This document shows positions 3,001 to 55,320 of a DNA stretch of 64,000 nt, one piece after another. Made by a program: the position numbers and the translations under genes. The stretch spans positions 62,001-126,000 of the IMG/VR virus record IMGVR_UViG_3300046542_000227. One strand, written 5' to 3'. Position 1 is the first letter of the stretch; each line of letters begins with the position of its first letter. The notes under the pieces are model-generated. The model saw only the letters and a list, made by a program, of their open reading frames with translations, did no database searches and was not told the DNA's origin.

Positions 3001-5897
3001 GTGCTGTAGCTGCCGGTGGTTATTGGTTGTGGAACCGGTCGAACAAAGTAAGCGGTGATTTCCGTGAACTGCGTTTGATGCAATACGGGATCGACTCCAC
3101 CAGTGACAAGCTGAAGATCCTCGAACTGGAAGCGTACTTGGAAACCTTCTCTCAGAAGGGTGCTGAGCCATCGCTGAACGTATCGGGTACCGATCCGAAG
3201 AAGATCTTTGAGATCATGGACATCGACGAAGACGAACCGGAGTCCATCGTTCGGATGGCTCGTTGGCTCGAACTGCGCTTTAAGCCAGTGTTCTTCGCTT
3301 GGTTGCGTGCCATGCACCAGCTCACCCCAACCGGTGTAGCTATCAACGAACTCGACGACAAACTTCCTGACGAAGCGAAGTATGACTTCTTCAACATCGT
3401 GAAGACGGTGCCGAATACAGTCTACGCTCAGCTGGGCAATCCGTTGGATGAAGATCCAATTGAGATTACCGCTGAGGACATCAACGCTAAAGTCACTGAA
3501 CTGATCGACAAATGGAAAGACAAGGCTAAGGCTAAAGACGAACAGAAGACGGGTGACACTACAGGGGCTACGGCGATTGTACCTCCGGGCGGTTCTAAGC
3601 CGGAAGACAAGGACAAGCCTAAAGCGGACGGCGCTGACAAACCTAAGGATGCTGAGAAGTCTAGTGCGTGGTATAGCATCAAGGCTGGCGCTAAAGGTCT
3701 GATGGGTGCGGTACCGGGTGCTGCTGCTATTGGTGGGCTGATCTCTGCTGTTAAAGAGGATTGGTTCGGCAAGATGTTCAGCGGTGCTTCGACGGCGGCC
3801 AAGATTGTAGCGACACCAGCATTGCTGGGTGGCATGGTCCTGAAGTCTGCGGTGATGATGGTTGGTGCTTTCAAGGCTGACAAACTCACCACGTTGCAAG
3901 CAGTGCGTGTACGTGCCTACGGGCGCATGCAGCTCGATGAGAAAACCATCAGTGCACTGTTTGAGTCTGAAGCCGAACTCTACAAACAAGTTCGTTACGA
4001 TACGGAAGGCCAGGCTTACTACGATGGCAACCTCGATCAGCTGATCGGCACCATGGCTAACATCTTTGGTGTGGACGTGACGGATGCAACCAGTCGCAAG
4101 GCTCAAGAGTTTACTGCTTGGATCCTGCAACGATTCATTCCTACCGGTCTGGCCTACTTTGCTGCGGTTAAGCAGAAGGGCAACGCCATTACCCCGAGCC
4201 GCGTTGAAACGGCTTTGGATGATGACGCTAAACTGTCGGTGGCCAATGCGTTGATGGTTGCTACCTACGAGATGAACGGGGAACAGATCTCTGTCTGGAA
4301 AGCCAACACGTTCTTTAATAACGGAACGTCCAGTCTGGACGCACTCAAGGCTGCGGCTGAGAAAGAGACAGCTGTCCTCAAAGAAGCGGCGGCGAAGGCT
4401 AAGTTAGCTTCTCCGGGTACTTCGGTTAAGGAACAAGAGAACCAAGAGAAGACCCAAGCGCGTACGACTGCTGAAAAGATCATGGATGGGGTTTCTAACC
4501 TCGGTGATAGCCTAAAGGAGAAATTCTCAAGCTTCGCTGACGGGGTGAAAGAATCCATCGGTGGTGCAGTCAACAGCGTTAAAGACTTCTTGGGTATGGG
4601 TCCGGGTGGCAAGAACGCTCAGACACCAGCTCCGTCTGCTTATAACACCGCGTACACCCCAGGTGGCACGTTGGAGCAGAAGGGTTCTACCTACTCGGCG
4701 TTTGCTGAGGGTAATGGTGGTGCTTGGAACAGCATCCCACTGCCTAAGTCGAACAAGTCCCGTGAAGCAGCAATGGAAACCCTGCGGGCCATTCAGGCCA
4801 TGACTGGGGTTGACGCAGAATTGCTGGCTACGTTTGCATCGATGGAGTCGAACTTTGACTACACGGTAAAAGCGGGAACGTCTTCGGCTACAGGTTGGTT
4901 CCAGTTCATCGACAAAACTTGGGACGGCATGCTTAAAGAACATGCTTCCAAATACGGCATCCCACCAGACAACAAGGACCGCTATTTGCGGAAGGACCCA
5001 CGGATCAACGGTCTGATGGGTGCTGAGTTCCTGAAGGGTAACTACAAGATTCTGGCTAAGGCATTGGGGCGTGCACCGACCGATACCGACCTGTACTTTG
5101 CTCACTTCTTGGGCCCACAGACAGCCGCTGGTTTCTTGAAGCGCGATCGGAATGCTATCGCAGCAAGTTTCTATCCAGATCAAGCTGGTGCTAACCGTAG
5201 CATCTTCTACAAGTCTACTGGTCAACCACGCACCATCGGTGAAGTCTACGACATCTTCGATGGCAAGGTACGCAAACACCGTAAGGGTGGGGGTGGTACT
5301 GATGTGGGTACAGCGACCACCGCAGTCGATCCACAGAAGGCGGCGGATGAGCAGGCCAAGGCAGTACAGGCCAGCGCAGACATCAAACCTCCAGCAGATC
5401 CAGTTACAGGTGAAGTAGGGACAAACCCGACAGGTGGTAACCCGAACGATAGCCTGAACATGACTGCAGATAAAGCAGCAGCACCAATGCGGATGGGTGA
5501 TCCATCGCAAGCCGGTCAGGGTGGTGGCGGTACAGCACCTTCTGGCGGTAGCAATCCAACTGTAGGCTCTGGGCAAGATCTGCCAGAGCGTAAGCAGGCT
5601 ATGGATGAAGCGATGCAGAAAGCCGCTGCAGGTGATAAAGCGCGTCAAGCAGCGAATCAAGAGAAGCAAGCGTTGTCGGCTACTTCGATGGATTTGATGC
5701 AAGAACAGTTGACCACTCAGCAACAGATGCGCGATTTGTTGAAGACCATTGCAGACAAACTGGGTTCCCCAGTCCAAGCAGCGCCAGCAGCACCGGCACC
5801 GGCCAGCAGCAAATCGGGTAATGATATGGGTAATCAACAAGCGCAAGCTGGGCGACAAGCGGGCAATGCCCCAACGCCAATCTCCTTCGCGCGATAA
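27..5897 (+). CDS. Large tail-associated protein with C-terminal lytic transglycosylase domain (phiKZ gp181-like); 5' end lies outside the window
   Basis: 1956-aa ORF, frame open to window start; Gly/Ala-rich hydrophobic tape-measure-like segment; SLT motifs ASMESNF, SSATGWFQFIDKTW, DLYFAHFLG. Confidence 0.85.
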   Translation: MGMLLKTLMQNPEDAAGGLAGDQIASFLHSSVIPSIARRARPGMKKVSDKLTGGGDSRIAYLLDNMASMSQDFANDAKNSTGMKGQLQKMVKMFAPQFRVNDLAKTGTYQTINQPAQFNQMTQRSIVEVIPGYLARILQETRMIRTGDDSIGREVFDITRGNFVQEKKSQDNLAKRVVGGNARRSVKYSLNSAVDGFTEDGSVLSPEARHALEERLLRDAMEGKHFDPVTYVKPEGYAPGTSAAVLAELTEFFKKQFKFSEDGQLAKSTANFTKRQEFSTKFNDLRDTVRNPMAEIERIMASGNTTQLRDLGIVHIVEGEDRINFAVLRELYRDLGDPSASGEPPPMPSPTGPLLSKLRKRLREGNEEIKKRSGRVRARVRGLGDRAKGALSDMEGPDVTAVTEAFNASKAQALVHADDVAKRATDLMIAGKEGVVIKASEILSGELIDVTTQKVIGRVEDIKGEVIDITGRVRLTRADVAQGLVNGEGRVLDLLKHLPKGIPPSVMSMLHGQRQQIGNLITAENGAMSRVKDLYLEGANDPVIKASGLRAGEYIDVATKKVLETIDDISGAVVRKDRPDEVLFTTEEAAEKLVDNSGKRFKSSKILKYLAWATGKSFSITAGMASIGLAVARKIGMFVAKKLTGLDAYLPPGREPILTTSKLKRGEYYNEDGSVIKSFDDLRDGVYTADGNLLVDPDDIPNLINRDGTKHTAAKHRSKIRKIAKKIAGLPMAAAKGIGKFWWKQTKAYYKGMGNMVANKFGKSKANAQDYNDKFITPTDGLLGQMLNLLDKRLPKEAAKEGSWQDKLQEAEAAAKAKKEGTKAERANRKKEAGGGLLGGLAKLLGRGKKDDEEEEGGGDTNIDLGGGEGGEGNDRKKNRKVRKKPRGKLGRGWDKLANTKLGKGVGRFGGNALMRGGGTAARLAGTGARVAGSALLGGLEFGALGLGGLASGAASMAGTGLAMAGSAAAAAGTAILGVLASPVVLGALAVGAVAAGGYWLWNRSNKVSGDFRELRLMQYGIDSTSDKLKILELEAYLETFSQKGAEPSLNVSGTDPKKIFEIMDIDEDEPESIVRMARWLELRFKPVFFAWLRAMHQLTPTGVAINELDDKLPDEAKYDFFNIVKTVPNTVYAQLGNPLDEDPIEITAEDINAKVTELIDKWKDKAKAKDEQKTGDTTGATAIVPPGGSKPEDKDKPKADGADKPKDAEKSSAWYSIKAGAKGLMGAVPGAAAIGGLISAVKEDWFGKMFSGASTAAKIVATPALLGGMVLKSAVMMVGAFKADKLTTLQAVRVRAYGRMQLDEKTISALFESEAELYKQVRYDTEGQAYYDGNLDQLIGTMANIFGVDVTDATSRKAQEFTAWILQRFIPTGLAYFAAVKQKGNAITPSRVETALDDDAKLSVANALMVATYEMNGEQISVWKANTFFNNGTSSLDALKAAAEKETAVLKEAAAKAKLASPGTSVKEQENQEKTQARTTAEKIMDGVSNLGDSLKEKFSSFADGVKESIGGAVNSVKDFLGMGPGGKNAQTPAPSAYNTAYTPGGTLEQKGSTYSAFAEGNGGAWNSIPLPKSNKSREAAMETLRAIQAMTGVDAELLATFASMESNFDYTVKAGTSSATGWFQFIDKTWDGMLKEHASKYGIPPDNKDRYLRKDPRINGLMGAEFLKGNYKILAKALGRAPTDTDLYFAHFLGPQTAAGFLKRDRNAIAASFYPDQAGANRSIFYKSTGQPRTIGEVYDIFDGKVRKHRKGGGGTDVGTATTAVDPQKAADEQAKAVQASADIKPPADPVTGEVGTNPTGGNPNDSLNMTADKAAAPMRMGDPSQAGQGGGGTAPSGGSNPTVGSGQDLPERKQAMDEAMQKAAAGDKARQAANQEKQALSATSMDLMQEQLTTQQQMRDLLKTIADKLGSPVQAAPAAPAPASSKSGNDMGNQQAQAGRQAGNAPTPISFAR

Positions 5898-11793: not shown

Positions 11794-11827
11794 GACATAA
11801 CCCCCGCCTTCGGGCGGGGTTTTATGC
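11794..11827 (+). terminator. Intrinsic terminator with CATAA/TTATG flanks
   Basis: ccccgcc-ttcg-ggcgggg hairpin plus ttttatg. Confidence 0.8.
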
Positions 11828-49362: not shown

Positions 49363-49992
49363 GTGGCTGAGCAATACCTACAATACGCACCTCAAATTCT
49401 GGCCATCCTGACACGTCAGGCTTGCGCCAAACAACCGATCACTTATGGCGATATCGCTGAGGAGATCGGTATTGCCCGTAAGGGTAATCACATGGTCAAC
49501 GTGATGAACTCGGCGTTGTCGCGTCTGTTCTTCTGGTGTCAGCACAACGGCTTGCCACACTTGACCTCACTGGCCGTACGTACTACTGAACAAGTACCCG
49601 GTGTTGGCTTCTGGGGTTTGATCGGTCAGCGTAGTTTGTCGCTTGCTGACAAACGGGCATTCCTGCGGATCATCCAGGAAGAAGTTTATCGTTACTATGA
49701 TCCAGTGTCTCGGATTGGGACACAGGCTATTCTACCATTCCTCGATTCCATCGAGTACACGTTCGGTAAAGAGCCTGGCGTCAACCATTGCGATTGTCGG
49801 GTGCATTTCCCCGGTGGTAGTGCCACACGTCGGGTGCACCATATACACACCGATCGTCATAAAGCCATGGCTGATGCTCTGGAAAGTACTCTGGAGTTCG
49901 TGGTCAAATCCATTTCACACAGTACGGCAACCACGCTGGAAGCCGCCAGCTTCAACAAACTTCGTACGCTGGTCATGGGAGAAGCACAATGA
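49363..49992 (+). CDS. Hypothetical protein with HTH-like N-terminus
   Basis: AAGGAG RBS, GTG start; ITYGDIAEEIG, LP.LTSL.V, PG.GF. Confidence 0.6.
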   Translation: MAEQYLQYAPQILAILTRQACAKQPITYGDIAEEIGIARKGNHMVNVMNSALSRLFFWCQHNGLPHLTSLAVRTTEQVPGVGFWGLIGQRSLSLADKRAFLRIIQEEVYRYYDPVSRIGTQAILPFLDSIEYTFGKEPGVNHCDCRVHFPGGSATRRVHHIHTDRHKAMADALESTLEFVVKSISHSTATTLEAASFNKLRTLVMGEAQ

Positions 49993-50657
49993 GTAATCGT
50001 TACGGTATCTACGACGTAAAGTGCAACAGCAATGTTTTCAGTAACGCATTGCTGGAGCAGTCGGGCATGGCCACTGGGGTGGCTGGTGACAATGACATTA
50101 CTTACATGGCGGGTGGTTTCCACACCTACGCCAAAACCGACATGGGTGTCTGGATGGATGCGGTGCGCCATCACGTAGATGCGCTGCAAGAGATCCGCGA
50201 CTCGATGGCGGGTGACGATCCATGGAGTGGTGGTCATGGCACTCAGAAGGAGTATTACATCACCTCCTGTGTTGGCTTCGAACCACGTGATGACGAAGAA
50301 CGTGACGCTCTTCTCCACGATGCAACAATGATTCTGCGTGAAGAGAAGGCCATTCTCAATTCGATCGTAAATGGCCTCGTGATCACACCCATCGAAATCC
50401 TCAGTGAAGCAGACGGTGCTGTGGTCGATGAAGCACTTGAATTGCTGAGTACGGCTCAAGTGGTTCAAGCGGCGTTGATTCAGAAGAATGGTCGTGAAGG
50501 CGATGCTTTGTACATGTCGAAGATCAAGCGTCTGCGTCGTGTACTGCCTGCACGTATGAAGAAAGGTATTCCAGGTGAAACGGGTTCCTATGTACAGGAT
50601 GAACTCGCGGCACTGGTAAAAGAAATCAAGCCTTTCTTGGCTAACCCACCAGCATAA
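49989..50657 (+). CDS. Hypothetical protein
   Basis: ATGA overlap. Confidence 0.65.
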   Translation: MSNRYGIYDVKCNSNVFSNALLEQSGMATGVAGDNDITYMAGGFHTYAKTDMGVWMDAVRHHVDALQEIRDSMAGDDPWSGGHGTQKEYYITSCVGFEPRDDEERDALLHDATMILREEKAILNSIVNGLVITPIEILSEADGAVVDEALELLSTAQVVQAALIQKNGREGDALYMSKIKRLRRVLPARMKKGIPGETGSYVQDELAALVKEIKPFLANPPA

Positions 50658-51265: not shown

Positions 51266-51310
51266 AGACTTGTATAGAGGCCTCAGTTTACCGCAAAAGG
51301 AAACTTGTTT

Positions 51311-52000
51311 ATGAAGCGCATTAACCTACTGTTGTGGGTGGCTGCATCGCTAATCAGTCTAACGGCGCATGCCAAGGAGTATGCGTTCTATGAACGTCCC
51401 TCGTTCATGGCTGAAAGTATGCCCAAGAAGATCAACTGCATACTGAAGTCTGAGTACTACGGTACCTGCTTAGGTGACTACACATCCACCGCCGATGTGC
51501 CGGTCAAGATCAGTACCGGGGAAGGAACCCCTGTCCAAGTTAAGTATGTCAATCCGCTGGTTTCGGTTAGTTGTCAACAAGGTGTTTGTGTTAACGACTT
51601 CAACGATACTCCGGTGGGCGACCTGCACATGGAGCATCTGCCGGCGAGCTACACGATCAACTGGACTATCATTGATGGCTACTACATCTACCATGATACC
51701 CAGAAAGGCGTGTTCGCTTACAAACGTGGCTTCGGTCCGTTAGCGGATAAATACCCGCCGTACCAGATCATCACTGAACCCGTACAGCGGATGTCGACTC
51801 TGGTCGATACCACTGGAACTTATGACGTGGTGTGTTTACCACAGTCTGATGATTGCCGCTTTGGTGATCGTCGTATTCCACGCTCTGATCTTTCGAAGTA
51901 CATTCCAAAGAAGTCCAGTGAGTGGTGTGACCAGGTCTTCTGCTACAGCAACGAATTTGCCGAAGGGGTAGTTGGTTTAAATCCTGAAGGCATGTATTAA
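51311..52000 (+). CDS. Secreted Cys-rich protein
   Basis: Signal peptide ending AHA; eight Cys. Confidence 0.7.
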   Translation: MKRINLLLWVAASLISLTAHAKEYAFYERPSFMAESMPKKINCILKSEYYGTCLGDYTSTADVPVKISTGEGTPVQVKYVNPLVSVSCQQGVCVNDFNDTPVGDLHMEHLPASYTINWTIIDGYYIYHDTQKGVFAYKRGFGPLADKYPPYQIITEPVQRMSTLVDTTGTYDVVCLPQSDDCRFGDRRIPRSDLSKYIPKKSSEWCDQVFCYSNEFAEGVVGLNPEGMY

Positions 52001-52040: not shown

Positions 52041-52343
52041 ATGGAAACCTTTCTCTTTCTACTAGGTATTGTGATCTGGTGGCGTAGCGGTGGTTTGATC
52101 GCTCGTCTACTTGGTGATAAAGCCGACGCCTTAATTAAAGCCATGCATGCACATTACTTCTTAGGACCACGTTCCGGTATCATCTGTTTGTTTGATGGTG
52201 CTATTCGTGGTTGCTTAATTGGTTTTGCTGTAGTGCACGGCGAGTTCTTCATTGCTAAGGCAATCATCATTCAAACATGCATCATACTGGCTGGTGTTAC
52301 AACCGGTATGCAGCGTATGCGTAAAGAATTACGTCAGGAATAA
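52041..52343 (+). CDS. Small membrane protein
   Basis: GAGGT RBS; three hydrophobic segments. Confidence 0.6.
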   Translation: METFLFLLGIVIWWRSGGLIARLLGDKADALIKAMHAHYFLGPRSGIICLFDGAIRGCLIGFAVVHGEFFIAKAIIIQTCIILAGVTTGMQRMRKELRQE

Positions 52344-52990
52344 ATAGTTTGCGATGATGGCGTGGTGCCATCTAGTGATAAAGGAATTCCTGATGCTGCT
52401 CAGCCCGATGCTCGCGCTTCTGGTTCAGCTGTCAGCTCAGTGCCTTTGCGAAGAGCCTAGGTTCGATGGGGTCACTTACGCATACGCAGACGGGGTGGAT
52501 CGGCATGTTGCCCGTTCGCCTTACGTACCCCCGCCCTCTAGTGCCCTGGCCATAGTAGCCCGGGCCCGTCTATGGGTGGGTCTTTCTGTGTATGCGAGTG
52601 CTACGCCTCACGAACTGCCGATAGGACTGAGACACACGCTTAAGGTGCGTGTAAGTCAAATGTTCCCTGTCGGCATTTCAGAGGAGTGACGTATGTTCTC
52701 CATTGGGCTTCTTTCGCATTGGGCGTTGTCTGATCGTTGTTTTGCTGCTCTCCGGCTTGCGTTCCGGATAAGCCGCTCCATTAGCCATATACGACGACTG
52801 CTCCATCGCACTGCAATCCCCTTCCGCAGGGAAGAGACTATTAATGTATCCAGGCCGATAAACCAAAACCGCGCACCTGTGCTGCACTCGGCTAAGGGCC
52901 GGGCTCGCACCCATAGAGGCGCTGCCTGGGAGCAATAGATCTCCCCTGATGGAAATAGTAAAGCGCCCGCCTACTGAGGTTGGGCGCTTT
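52344..52990 (+). ncRNA. Candidate large structured ncRNA (about 500-650 nt)
   Basis: Nested long-range helices with G-U pairs on + strand; ends at terminator 52960-52990; overlapping ORFs are not phage-like. Confidence 0.65.
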
Positions 52991-53032
52991 ATGCCCCTTT
53001 TATGCCGTCGGCCTCTTTAGGAGTTTATTTAC

Positions 53033-53893
53033 ATGGTCACTAAGTTAATGAGAATGGTCGCTCGGTTTCGTAATCGGCACAGCGTCGAATTACAGATCCG
53101 TTTGAAGTCAAGTGAATCGCAACCACCAGCTGTGGATCAACACATGCATGCCATCCCGTACGCCATTCGCATGGGTGAACTGTTTCCTAACTACAAACCA
53201 ACTGACACGGATCTTGAGATCCTCGCCAACTATCCAATGAACCATAGTGAAGCAGACCTTCCGGTATTGGTCCGCACGATCTATAGTTTCGACAAACACT
53301 ACACCTACTCCGATGTCGCTAGTACCTTGCGTTTCGGTGATCAGGTGGTCGCTACGATCAAAGCCGGTTTGGCCAAGATCGATGATCTCCAAGCGCGCCA
53401 GCTGTTGTCGCGTAACTGGTATGCTGATGACCGCAGTGAAATGGTAGATGCCTATCCATGGCTCGCTACCCACGGTCGTGCTACGGCCTTCACGTCACTG
53501 GTCACCAGCGGTGTACTGCCTGAGAAAGCGTCGACCTACGTCGGGGTAATCAATGGCCTGCGTGACTTGATCGCGACGATCTACCTGCGTACTAATACCT
53601 GTGGGCAACTGCTGGTATGGGGCAGCGATTACGACCGGGCTCGGTATTATGCCCGCTATCGTAATAACAAGATGTTCCACGGTGTAGCTTTACCTTCCGA
53701 TCTTTATACACGGGTGGATCAGCTCGCCGATTACATCGGTGGTCGGGAACTTAAAGAAGCCCTAGTCTTGGGTAAGTCCGAGTACTCGATTGTGCGTCAA
53801 CCGCTGATGCGGGACGACTGCCTTTACACCATCCATCGTTTCGACACCCCAATGATCAGCTTCTTCGTAGCCGGTCAACCTGTATCTAACTAA
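53033..53893 (+). CDS. Hypothetical protein
   Basis: AGGAG RBS, 286 aa. Confidence 0.65.
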   Translation: MVTKLMRMVARFRNRHSVELQIRLKSSESQPPAVDQHMHAIPYAIRMGELFPNYKPTDTDLEILANYPMNHSEADLPVLVRTIYSFDKHYTYSDVASTLRFGDQVVATIKAGLAKIDDLQARQLLSRNWYADDRSEMVDAYPWLATHGRATAFTSLVTSGVLPEKASTYVGVINGLRDLIATIYLRTNTCGQLLVWGSDYDRARYYARYRNNKMFHGVALPSDLYTRVDQLADYIGGRELKEALVLGKSEYSIVRQPLMRDDCLYTIHRFDTPMISFFVAGQPVSN

Positions 53894-54945: not shown

Positions 54946-55025
54946 TGTAAATAAATACTGATTGGTTTAATAGAAAGGGGGAACCTAGCCGTTAGGCGAC
55001 GGAGGGGGATAGATATGTCGTGTGA

Positions 55026-55176
55026 GGGATTTGTTAAAATCCCGATCCATCCTTTCTCTGTTAAAAGGCCTATTGGGGTTGGGGACCCAATAGGCTTGCT
55101 CTGTCTGGATAGAAAGTCCAAAGCTCTATCTTGGACTTTTGTTAAATAACAGTGAGTGGGTAGGGCCCCCACTCAC
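55026..55176. repeat. Cluster of perfect inverted repeats
   Basis: 55026-32/55037-43, 55068-77/55086-95, 55113-21/55131-39, 55152-60/55168-76. Confidence 0.7.
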
Positions 55177-55320
55177 ACGCCTTTTGCTTTTATAGCGATA
55201 GCCTCCAGCTTACGGAGGGCATAAGAGAGACCCACCAAGGTCTCTCCGTTTATGTCGTTTCTATCCATTTAGAGAACTACATCATGCGATTGATCTTACC
55301 CAACCTTTAAGGTACTGAAA

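What the first reader, a model, noticed from the sequence alone, without database searches (positions are those of the whole stretch)
52344..52990. Large, deeply nested structured RNA with no family I recognise
Seen, + strand pairings: 52344-50/52835-41 and 52350-56/52804-10 close the domain; tcag-cagtgcc-tgcgaa-gagccta (52432-59) pairs with 52704-33; cact..cgcatacgcaga (52473-90) with tctgtgtatgcgagtg (52585-600); tgccgatagg (52616-25) with cctgtcggca (52666-75), enclosing an acacgc/gcgtgt hairpin; cggctt/aagccg (52753-75). A second domain is closed by ccaggc/gcctgg (52850-55/52924-29), followed by a terminator. Many G-U pairs support an RNA on the + strand. About 650 nt without a credible gene is unusual in this dense genome. 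I saw no tmRNA, RNase P or intron hallmarks. Inference: a novel large phage ncRNA (scaffold, ribozyme or sponge).
Basis: partly seen in the sequence, partly recalled or inferred. Interest (0 to 1): 0.85.

Follow-up and report, generated by a model that had tools for sequence, protein, structure and literature searches.

The report
Large structured phage RNA carrying ORFs
A roughly 650-base stretch of a phiKZ-like jumbo phage folds into a large RNA structure conserved in six related phage lineages and matching no known RNA family, but it is not gene-free: it also carries two small reading frames, and the start of the first behaves like a real protein.

Summary
The structure is real. Window 52344-52992 (+) has homologues in six lineages of Noxifer-like (Chimalliviridae) jumbo phages, always between the same two genes. 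About 130 consensus base pairs are 93% kept. 39 pairs show compensatory double changes, against 5-10 in slid controls. Consensus-energy z is -9.1, and another 14 of 32 pairs covary in the 3' domain.

Between close relatives the element is 94-97% identical while flanking genes are 62-80%. Its "synonymous" sites are 5-20 times more conserved than those of its neighbours. No Rfam family matches.

Both mechanical ORFs (conserved starts at 52393 and 52693) stay open in all six lineages, each with a conserved Shine-Dalgarno plus AUG. ORF1's first ~40 codons, a hydrophobic helix, show protein-level purifying selection (16 synonymous against 9 non-synonymous changes, p=4e-5). The rest of ORF1 and ORF2 evolve like non-coding sequence held by base pairing.

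Best reading: a new large RNA fold that is also a messenger. It probably gates translation of its own small ORFs and presents conserved AAGG loops. A pure non-coding RNA remains the main rival. A read-through fusion protein is not conserved. A second structured non-coding island lies at 54946-55320.

The parts
52344..52992 (+). Whole conserved structured RNA element (about 650 nt)
   Evidence: Homologous and syntenic in six lineages. Consensus fold with covariation. 94-97% identity to L039 against 62-80% in flanking genes.
52347..52355 (+). 5' strand of closing helix H1; pairs with 52805-52814 inside the invariant block CUCCAUCGCACUGCAA
   Evidence: 8 pairs, 100% of cells paired in 8 sequences, with only one-sided G-U/A-U changes. 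Two mismatches in lineage E.
52381..52385 (+). Invariant AAGGA: Shine-Dalgarno-like, 7-10 nt before the conserved AUG of ORF1. GGA is predicted to pair with UCC at 52802-52804; the adjacent 52386-88 pairs with 52793-95.
   Evidence: Invariant in 10 sequences. Helix with a U-A to C-G compensatory pair (col 46/460).
52393..52689 (+). ORF1 (98 codons from the conserved AUG; the ORF listing extends it upstream to 52354). Hydrophobic N-terminal helix.
   Evidence: Open in all six lineages at 87-113 codons. 0 in-frame against 21 lineage-specific off-frame stops. Codons 1-40: 16 S / 9 N, p=4e-5; codons 41+: 9 S / 23 N. AlphaFold pLDDT 49.8, with only the N-terminal helix moderately confident.
52431..52452 (+). 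5' strand of an 18-bp long-range helix; pairs with 52713-52734. This links ORF1 codons ~13-20 to ORF2 codons ~7-14.
   Evidence: 3 pairs with double changes and 7 with one-sided consistent changes; 94% of cells paired.
52486..52589 (+). 5' subdomain: stem 52486-90/52585-89 enclosing stems 52492-503/52512-22 and 52562-69/52576-83
   Evidence: 3, 7 and 2 covarying pairs respectively. Sequence poorly conserved between deep lineages while the stems are kept.
52618..52673 (+). Central arm ending in a hairpin (52635-39/52647-51) with the conserved loop UUAAGGU
   Evidence: 9 covarying pairs in three stacked stems. Stem is CACGC/GCGUG in lineage A, CGCGC/GCGCG in B, CACGG/CCGUG in C-E and CAACC/GGUUG in F.
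52681..52701 (+). GAGGAG (SD-like) plus AUG of ORF2, folded as a small hairpin 52683-90/52695-701
   Evidence: SD+AUG present in all lineages. The hairpin has only one-sided changes.
52693..52938 (+). ORF2 (81 codons)
   Evidence: Open at 67-92 codons in all lineages, but lineages D-F were found through this ORF, so this is biased. No third-position excess. Codons 1-40: 8 S / 13 N, not significant. AlphaFold pLDDT 58, one long N-terminal helix.
52749..52770 (+).
   Evidence: Two compensatory pairs, e.g. C-G to U-A in 4 of 8 sequences.
52832..52946 (+). 3' domain: long irregular hairpin with conserved internal-loop strands CGAUAAACC and CCAUAGAG, capped by a hairpin at 52883-52909 with loop UAAGG
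   Evidence: A covariance model built from lineage A alone finds lineages B (E=1e-7), C (3e-5), D (2e-5) and E (0.03) full length. 32 pairs, 94% paired, 14 with double changes against 0-3 slid.
52959..52991 (+). Terminator hairpin followed by UUUAU
   Evidence: Stem covaries at 3 pairs. Same hairpin+TTTATGC(C/T)GTC unit at seven other places in the window.
52988..53009 (+). Two TTTATGCC motifs: likely phiKZ-type late promoter(s) (TATG, start at G) for the next gene at 53033
   Evidence: TTTATGCC occurs 7 times against 1.3 expected, all on +. phiKZ late-promoter consensus TATG (PMC4666361). Invariant across lineages.

Best explanation
Window 52344-52992 is a transcript segment, made on the + strand, whose main conserved property is a large nested RNA fold. 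The fold has a 460-nt 5' domain closed by long-range helices, a 115-nt 3' hairpin domain and a terminator. It occurs only in Noxifer-like nucleus-forming (Chimalliviridae) jumbo phages and belongs to no described RNA family. It is also a messenger. ORF1 (from 52393) starts with a hydrophobic helix of about 40 codons that is under protein-level selection, and ORF2 (from 52693) is kept open. From about 52500 to 52950 selection acts on nucleotides and base pairs, not on amino acids. Proposed mechanism (inferred, not shown): the fold gates translation of its own ORFs. SD1 is tied to the far 3' block CUCC(AUCGC). SD2 and AUG2 sit in a hairpin. An 18-bp helix joins early ORF1 codons to early ORF2 codons, so ribosomes on ORF1 would unfold the ORF2 start region. 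The covarying 3' domain and the two conserved AAGG loops would provide a stable module that binds a phage or host factor or protects the RNA.
For: Shown:
- Conserved structure with compensatory changes, and controls.
- Strand: 119 G-U against 11 A-C cells, terminator and gene orientation.
- Element far more conserved than flanking genes.
- dS 0.05-0.34 in the ORFs against 0.5-2.5 in the neighbours.
- No codon periodicity over most of the ORFs, while flanking genes show a 2-4x third-position excess.
- ORF frames differ between lineages: same frame in A, B and F; overlapping in another frame in C, D and E.
- ORFs open in all lineages with SD+AUG.
- ORF1 codons 1-40 have 64% synonymous changes, p=4e-5. 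In L041 against L042 the first 39 codons carry 9 changes, all synonymous.
- dN/dS is lower in the ORF frame (about 0.5) than in the off frames (about 1-1.7).
- No Rfam, Pfam or PHROG match.

Inferred: SD sequestration and coupling, read from the consensus pairs.
Against: - There are no expression data of any kind. The 5' end, abundance, processing and translation are all unknown.
- Helices that sequester the SDs rest mostly on invariant or one-sided changes, so they are not proven.
- ORF2's open frame in lineages D-F is biased by how those lineages were found.
- Only about 11 distinct sequences in six lineages are available, so no R-scape-grade statistics are possible. The consensus structures were derived from the same alignments used for counting.
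- AlphaFold gives no confident fold for either product.
- Low dS could also reflect a DNA-level function.
Confidence: 0.55

Rival explanations
1. Pure non-coding RNA. The RNA acts only as a folded molecule (scaffold, decoy, ribozyme or self-assembling particle). The ORFs are not translated, and their openness and SD-like motifs are by-products of RNA constraints.
For: All the structure and conservation evidence. No coding signature in ORF1 codons 41+ or in ORF2. Frameshifts between lineages change the ORF1 C-terminus and the ORF1/ORF2 frame relation. Products are Arg/Pro-rich with low AlphaFold confidence. Both SD-like motifs fall in predicted helices.
Against: ORF1 codons 1-40 have a significant excess of synonymous changes (p=4e-5), and this is specific to the ORF frame (19S/22N against 14S/63N off-frame, p=0.002). 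There are 0 in-frame against 21 lineage-specific off-frame stops in ORF1 (about 10 expected, P~3e-5). SD+AUG spacing is conserved for both ORFs in six lineages.
Confidence: 0.27
2. Two ordinary small protein genes, as annotated in Noxifer (NOXIFER_286 and _287), or one protein made by reading through the stop between them. The predicted RNA structure would be incidental.
For: Gene callers call both ORFs. ORFs are open and have SD+AUG. In lineages A and B they share a frame with a single intervening stop.
Against: Synonymous sites are 5-20x more conserved than in neighbouring genes. There is no third-position excess over most of the length. Amino-acid identity is no better in the ORF frame than in other frames. 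39+14 compensatory pairs are seen. The same-frame arrangement is lost in C, D and E, and F has two stops between the ORFs, so a read-through fusion is not conserved. No protein family matches.
Confidence: 0.08
3. DNA-level element, such as a replication origin, packaging or recombination site, or the result of recent horizontal exchange of this segment.
For: Very high nucleotide identity at all codon positions with sharp borders. The minus strand also scores a strong consensus-fold z of -7.1.
Against: Pairs are kept through G-U intermediates on the + strand only: 119 G-U against 11 A-C. Compensatory changes occur across deep lineages. A second high-identity island again coincides exactly with a structured intergenic region, which argues for selection rather than exchange. 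The element ends at a standard terminator.
Confidence: 0.04

Closest known systems
GOLLD (RF01998) and ROOL (RF03087): large ornate RNAs of phages and prophages
   Same: [quoted passage not shown] GOLLD has a better-conserved 3' region and a variable 5' region (PMC12286853). Here the 5' half is likewise the variable part and cannot be aligned in lineage F.
   Different: No match to their covariance models even at E<=10. Not next to tRNA genes. Restricted to one small clade of Chimalliviridae. Overlaps two conserved open reading frames. Multimer formation is untested.
Dual-function (coding plus structured) RNAs such as Staphylococcus aureus RNAIII/hld (my own knowledge, not tested here)
   Same: About 0.5-0.65 kb RNA with many hairpins and long-range helices closing domains. 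Carries a small translated ORF while the fold is the conserved functional feature.
   Different: No sequence or structural homology. Two ORFs of 67-113 codons. No known targets. Phage rather than cellular.
hok/sok-type type I toxin mRNAs and the long-range translational coupling of RNA phages such as MS2 (my own knowledge)
   Same: 5'-3' fold-back closure of the mRNA, Shine-Dalgarno sequences buried in structure, a downstream frame whose start region pairs with the upstream coding sequence, and a hydrophobic N-terminal peptide.
   Different: ORFs are longer than typical type I toxins. No antisense RNA or toxicity evidence. Much larger fold with an extra 3' domain.
Small ncRNAs reported in phiKZ and 201phi2-1 (PMC10914365, PMC11512511)
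   Same: Found in related Chimalliviridae and bounded by the same kind of terminator and promoter motifs.
   Different: Those are under 250 nt and mostly 5'UTR-derived. The syntenic position after the gp192 homologue in phiKZ and 201phi2-1 holds tightly packed small genes, with no comparable element annotated. R1, which models only the 3' domain, found nothing in those loci.

Membership tests
Any Rfam 15 family, including GOLLD, ROOL, OLE, HEARO, raiA, RNase P, tmRNA, group I/II introns and 6S | Score to the family covariance model at or near its gathering threshold | tested here: not met
   Whole window at gathering thresholds gives only 3 tRNAs elsewhere. 52200-53100 at E<=10 gives a best hit of 17.6 bits against a threshold of 61. 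Noxifer locus at E<=1 gives nothing in the element. ARAGORN finds no tRNA or tmRNA.
CsrB/RsmZ-type CsrA sponge RNA | Many GGA motifs, mostly in hairpin loops, above chance density | tested here: not met
   8 GGA observed against 9.5 expected in 649 nt. The conserved loops are AAGG(U/G), not GGA, in most lineages. Only one conserved (ACA)AGGA(UG) site near the 5' end.
Ordinary protein-coding gene | Third-position excess, dN/dS well below 1 along the ORF, and dS like that of neighbouring genes | tested here: not met
   Met only for ORF1 codons 1-40 (16S/9N). Not met for ORF1 codons 41+, for ORF2, or for dS (0.05-0.34 against 0.5-2.5).
Ordinary protein-coding gene | Reading frame kept open, with a conserved ribosome-binding site and start codon across relatives | tested here: met
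   Both ORFs are open in six lineages with SD+AUG. ORF1 has 0 in-frame against 21 lineage-specific off-frame stops. ORF2 is subject to ascertainment bias in lineages D-F.
Read-through (stop-codon recoded) fusion protein | ORF1 and ORF2 in the same frame, separated by one stop, in all relatives | tested here: not met
   Same frame in A, B and F only. F has two stops in between. In C, D and E, ORF1 overlaps ORF2 in a different frame.
Structured functional RNA (generic) | Base pairs maintained by compensatory substitutions beyond controls | tested here: met
   39 of 131 pairs against 5-10 slid, with 0/500 shuffles. 14 of 32 in the 3' domain against 0-3 slid. Column-shuffle z -9.1. Caveat: the structures were derived from the same alignments.
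Type I toxin-antitoxin (hok/sok-like) mRNA | Small (under about 60 aa) hydrophobic toxin ORF | tested here: not met
   ORF1 is 87-113 codons. Only the first ~40 codons, a hydrophobic helix, are constrained.
Type I toxin-antitoxin (hok/sok-like) mRNA | Cis-encoded antisense RNA and toxicity of the peptide | not tested
   No transcript data. The promoter scan found nothing informative on the minus strand.
Intrinsic terminator of this phage group | GC-rich hairpin followed by UUUAU(GCCGUC), recurring at gene ends | tested here: met
   52959-52991 plus the tail. Stem covaries. The same unit recurs at 11821, 14323, 18105, 19377, 26070 and 54453.

The most novel reading that the evidence does not exclude
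The fold is a new class of large autonomous phage RNA, on the scale of ROOL and GOLLD, specific to nucleus-forming jumbo phages. It would have a function of its own: an RNP scaffold, a self-assembling particle, or a decoy acting in the cytoplasm where chimallivirus RNAs are exposed. It may work together with the second structured RNA island 2 kb downstream. The embedded ORFs would be secondary.
Probability: 0.3. Interest if true: 0.8.

Novelty: new variant of a known kind. Interest (0 to 1): 0.62.

Why it matters
Conserved RNA folds above 500 nt are rare, and nearly every one studied has turned out to be mechanistically important. None has been described for the nucleus-forming Chimalliviridae, where transcription and translation are physically separated and RNA handling is an open question.

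This element is annotated in the only cultured carrier, Pseudomonas phage Noxifer, as two hypothetical proteins. The comparison shows that the dominant constraint is RNA structure laid over weakly constrained reading frames. That is unusual for a DNA phage, and it is directly testable in a harmless laboratory pair: Noxifer on P. fluorescens SBW25. It is also a warning that small 'hypothetical proteins' in jumbo phages can hide structured RNAs.

Tried and rejected
- **Known RNA families:** Rfam at gathering thresholds and at E<=10, plus ARAGORN, found no known family.
- **GenBank phages:** megablast found no match. Only Noxifer appeared with blastn.
- **Exact-pattern scans:** IMG/VR holds only the window's own contig and Noxifer. 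The metagenome scan gave 120 mostly chance hits, of which nhmmer kept one (L135). Genome contigs gave none.
- **A second jumbo-phage clade (L008, L009, L028, L032):** it shares the 18-mer ACUCGGCNAAGGGCCGGG. It is not homologous beyond a 27-nt hairpin: model R1 matches only positions 52-78 at E~0.01, and those loci were chosen by that same motif. The apparent upstream hairpin lies in a protein-like ORF.
- **CsrA-sponge idea:** prompted by Noxifer being listed among csrA+ phages in PMC7366521. GGA is not enriched, and a crude regex found no CsrA-like ORF in the window.
- **phiKZ-type middle promoter upstream (AAGAATTAC at 52324-32):** only a loose match, and TACGTNAGG is not recurrent. The 5' end is left undefined.
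- **Synteny with phiKZ and 201phi2-1 after the gp192 homologue:** no comparable element.
- **Protein families for the ORFs and eight neighbouring genes:** Pfam and PHROGs gave nothing informative.
- **AlphaFold of both ORF products:** low confidence and uninformative.
- **My first codon-position test:** it used window-frame columns for other lineages, which is invalid where indels shift the frame. I redid it in native frames.

Full report
**What is there**

The region lies between a 100-codon ORF (52041-52343) and a 286-codon ORF (53033-53893), all on the + strand. Its G+C is about 0.55, against 0.45-0.50 just upstream. Two mechanical ORFs fill it, 52354-52689 and 52693-52938. They are in the same frame and separated by one TGA.

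Rfam found only three tRNAs elsewhere in the window at gathering thresholds. Nothing relevant appeared in 52200-53100 even at E<=10. The single-sequence fold is unusually stable: -271.7 kcal/mol, z=-5.4 on the + strand and -3.1 on the minus strand, with 20 shuffles each.

**Relatives**

The window comes from a 267-kb IMG/VR contig. The only GenBank phage with similar DNA is Pseudomonas phage Noxifer, at 69% identity over 52637-52918.

- Noxifervirus belongs to the Chimalliviridae, the nucleus-forming phages.
- The 231-codon gene upstream (51305-52000) is a homologue of phiKZ gp192.
- The neighbourhood is syntenic, and Noxifer annotates two hypothetical proteins over the element.

I assembled 11 distinct copies by three routes: the flanking 286-aa protein, the two ORF "proteins" as queries in the protein collections, and DNA patterns. 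The copies fall into six lineages.

| Lineage | Copies |
|---|---|
| A | window, L039, L135, L171 (L043 is a partial copy of L171) |
| B | Noxifer L001 and L044, L172 |
| C | L041, L042 |
| D | L174 |
| E | L176 |
| F | L179 (5' half too diverged to align) |

All copies sit between the same two genes. phiKZ and 201phi2-1 have no comparable element annotated at the syntenic place. R1, which models only the 3' domain, found nothing in those loci. No copy was found in 185,579 species genomes.

**RNA structure**

- *Eight sequences:* RNAalifold gives 131 pairs. 93.3% of cells are paired, against 38-42% when partners are slid. 39 pairs have changes on both sides, against 5-10 when slid, and 0 of 500 shuffles reach the observed value.
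- *Ten sequences from five deep lineages:* the core helices persist, with 94 pairs and 36 covarying.
- *Column shuffling:* the consensus-energy z is -9.1 on + and -7.1 on minus.
- *Strand:* the + strand is favoured by 119 G-U against 11 A-C cells, by the terminator and by gene orientation.
- *3' domain (52832-52946):* MAFFT misaligns it. A covariance model built from lineage A alone finds lineages B, C and D full length (E=1e-7 to 3e-5) and E weakly (0.03). On that alignment 14 of 32 pairs covary, against 0-3 when slid.

Caveat: every structure was derived from the alignment it was counted on, and the sequences are few.

**Anatomy**

- A 5' block, GUUUGCGAU, pairs with AUCGCACUGC 460 nt downstream.
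- An 18-bp helix joins 52431-52 to 52713-34.
- Inside these sit a variable 5' subdomain and a central arm, which ends in a hairpin with loop UUAAGGU.
- The 3' domain is a long irregular hairpin with conserved internal-loop strands and an apical UAAGG loop.
- A terminator hairpin follows, then two TTTATGCC motifs.
- The unit "hairpin + TTTATGC(C/T)GTC" recurs through the window: TTTATGCC occurs 7 times against 1.3 expected. It fits the phiKZ late-promoter consensus TATG (PMC4666361).

Two are replaced; see the observation check.

**Strength of constraint**

Against its closest relative, L039, the element is 94-97.5% identical. The flanking protein genes are 62-80% identical. Synonymous divergence within the two ORFs is 0.05-0.34. 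In the neighbouring genes of the same genome pairs it is 0.5-2.5. Protein-level selection cannot produce that pattern.

**Are the ORFs genes?**

Evidence against ordinary coding:

- Substitutions are spread evenly over codon positions. In Noxifer against L041, in native frames, the counts are 25/26/23 and 20/21/30. Across five lineages they are 3.7/3.6/3.6 per column for ORF2. Flanking genes show a 2-4 fold third-position excess.
- Amino-acid identity is no better in the ORF frame than in other frames.
- A 1-nt indel changes the ORF1 C-terminus between lineages B and C.
- The frame relation between ORF1 and ORF2 differs between lineages, so a read-through fusion is not conserved.
- Pfam, PHROGs and two very large protein searches find only these same loci.
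- AlphaFold gives pLDDT 50 and 58, with only N-terminal helices.

Evidence for translation:

- Both frames are open in all six lineages (87-113 and 67-92 codons), each behind a conserved SD-like motif and AUG.
- For ORF1, 21 lineage-specific stop triplets lie in the two off frames and none in frame, where about 10 are expected (P~3e-5). The ORF2 count is biased, because lineages D-F were found through that ORF.
- Among within-lineage pairs, ORF1 codons 1-40 have 16 synonymous against 9 non-synonymous changed codons (p=4e-5). In L041 against L042 the first 39 codons carry 9 changes, all silent.
- ORF1 codons 41+ (9/23), ORF2 codons 1-40 (8/13) and ORF2 codons 41+ (9/22) do not differ from neutral.
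- dN/dS is about 0.5 in the ORF frames against about 1-1.7 in the off frames.

**Interpretation**

The data need two layers. The first is a strong RNA-level constraint over the whole element, shown by pairing, nucleotide identity and conserved loops. The second is a weaker protein-level constraint, which is clear only for the hydrophobic first ~40 codons of ORF1, together with avoidance of stops.

I therefore read the element as a large structured RNA that is also a messenger. A plausible mechanism, which is inferred only, follows from the anatomy:

- SD1 is predicted to pair with the distant CUCC block.
- SD2 and AUG2 are in a hairpin.
- The ORF2 start region is paired with early ORF1 codons.

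The fold could therefore gate and couple translation, as in hok-type mRNAs or RNA-phage coupling. The 3' domain and the AAGG loops would bind a factor or stabilise the RNA.

The main rival is a pure ncRNA whose ORFs are not translated. Ordinary genes with incidental structure, or a DNA-level element, are unlikely.

**Novelty**

I found no description of such an element. Reported ncRNAs of phiKZ-like phages are under 250 nt (PMC10914365, PMC11512511). The known large phage RNAs GOLLD and ROOL (PMC12286853) do not match. It is a new family of large RNA fold, with an unusual overlap with reading frames, and it has a narrow distribution.

**Also seen**

A second island of 94-97% identity lies at 54946-55320. 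It is a 375-nt intergenic region with six covarying hairpins, invariant G-rich loops and no Rfam match.

Noticed in passing
window 54946-55320 (+): Second conserved, structured intergenic region between the 99-codon and 291-codon ORFs. Five-sequence consensus has 86 pairs, 13 covarying, in six hairpins with invariant G-rich loops (GGGGUUGGGGACCC, GGGUAGGGC). It is 94-97% identical to L039 while flanking genes are 62-80%. No ORF is called there in any lineage, and there is no Rfam match. This may be a cleaner ncRNA candidate than the finding itself.
   Followed up: partly
window 11821, 14323, 18105, 19377, 26070, 52988/52999, 54453 (+): Recurrent unit of a GC-rich hairpin immediately followed by (T/C)TTATGC(C/T)GTC. 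This is probably a terminator fused to a phiKZ-type late promoter (TATG, start at G). TTTATGCC occurs 7 times against 1.3 expected, all on the + strand.
   Followed up: partly
L032:~5040-5375 (-), also L009, L028, L008: A different clade of jumbo-phage contigs (81-239 kb) carries a nearly invariant non-coding block of about 330 nt, preceded by GTATAAT/TATATTAC and lying upstream of tRNA arrays. It shares only a 27-nt hairpin (UGCACUCGGCAAAGGGCCGGGUAAGCA) with the window element. No Rfam match. Possibly another unknown phage RNA.
   Followed up: partly
L010-L013, L015-L019, L021, L024-L026, L030, L031, L033, L034, L036 (IMG/VR sample 3300045988, contigs of ~15-17 kb): The same 18-mer forms a hairpin (GGGACUCGGCAAAGGGCCGGGUCCC + U-run) just upstream of a ribosome-binding site in a family of small viral contigs. 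This is convergent use or chance.
   Followed up: no
window 49989-50657 (+): This 222-codon ORF has no counterpart at the same place in the close relative L039 (0-5% identity over 50000-50600 in the pairwise alignment). It is a gene replacement or indel between otherwise collinear genomes.
   Followed up: no
window 52379-52392; L001 ~2240-2255: The invariant motif around SD1 reads ACAAGGAUG in lineages B-E. From memory this resembles the CsrA/RsmA high-affinity site, and Noxifer is listed among csrA-carrying phages (PMC7366521). One site only, so not a sponge, but possibly CsrA-regulated translation of ORF1.
   Followed up: no
L179:2660-3299: In lineage F the 100-codon gene upstream of the element is absent. 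The ORF1 region is so diverged that it no longer aligns, and its product has an ordinary, acidic, protein-like composition. From the AAGG hairpin onward the RNA is recognisably homologous.
   Followed up: partly
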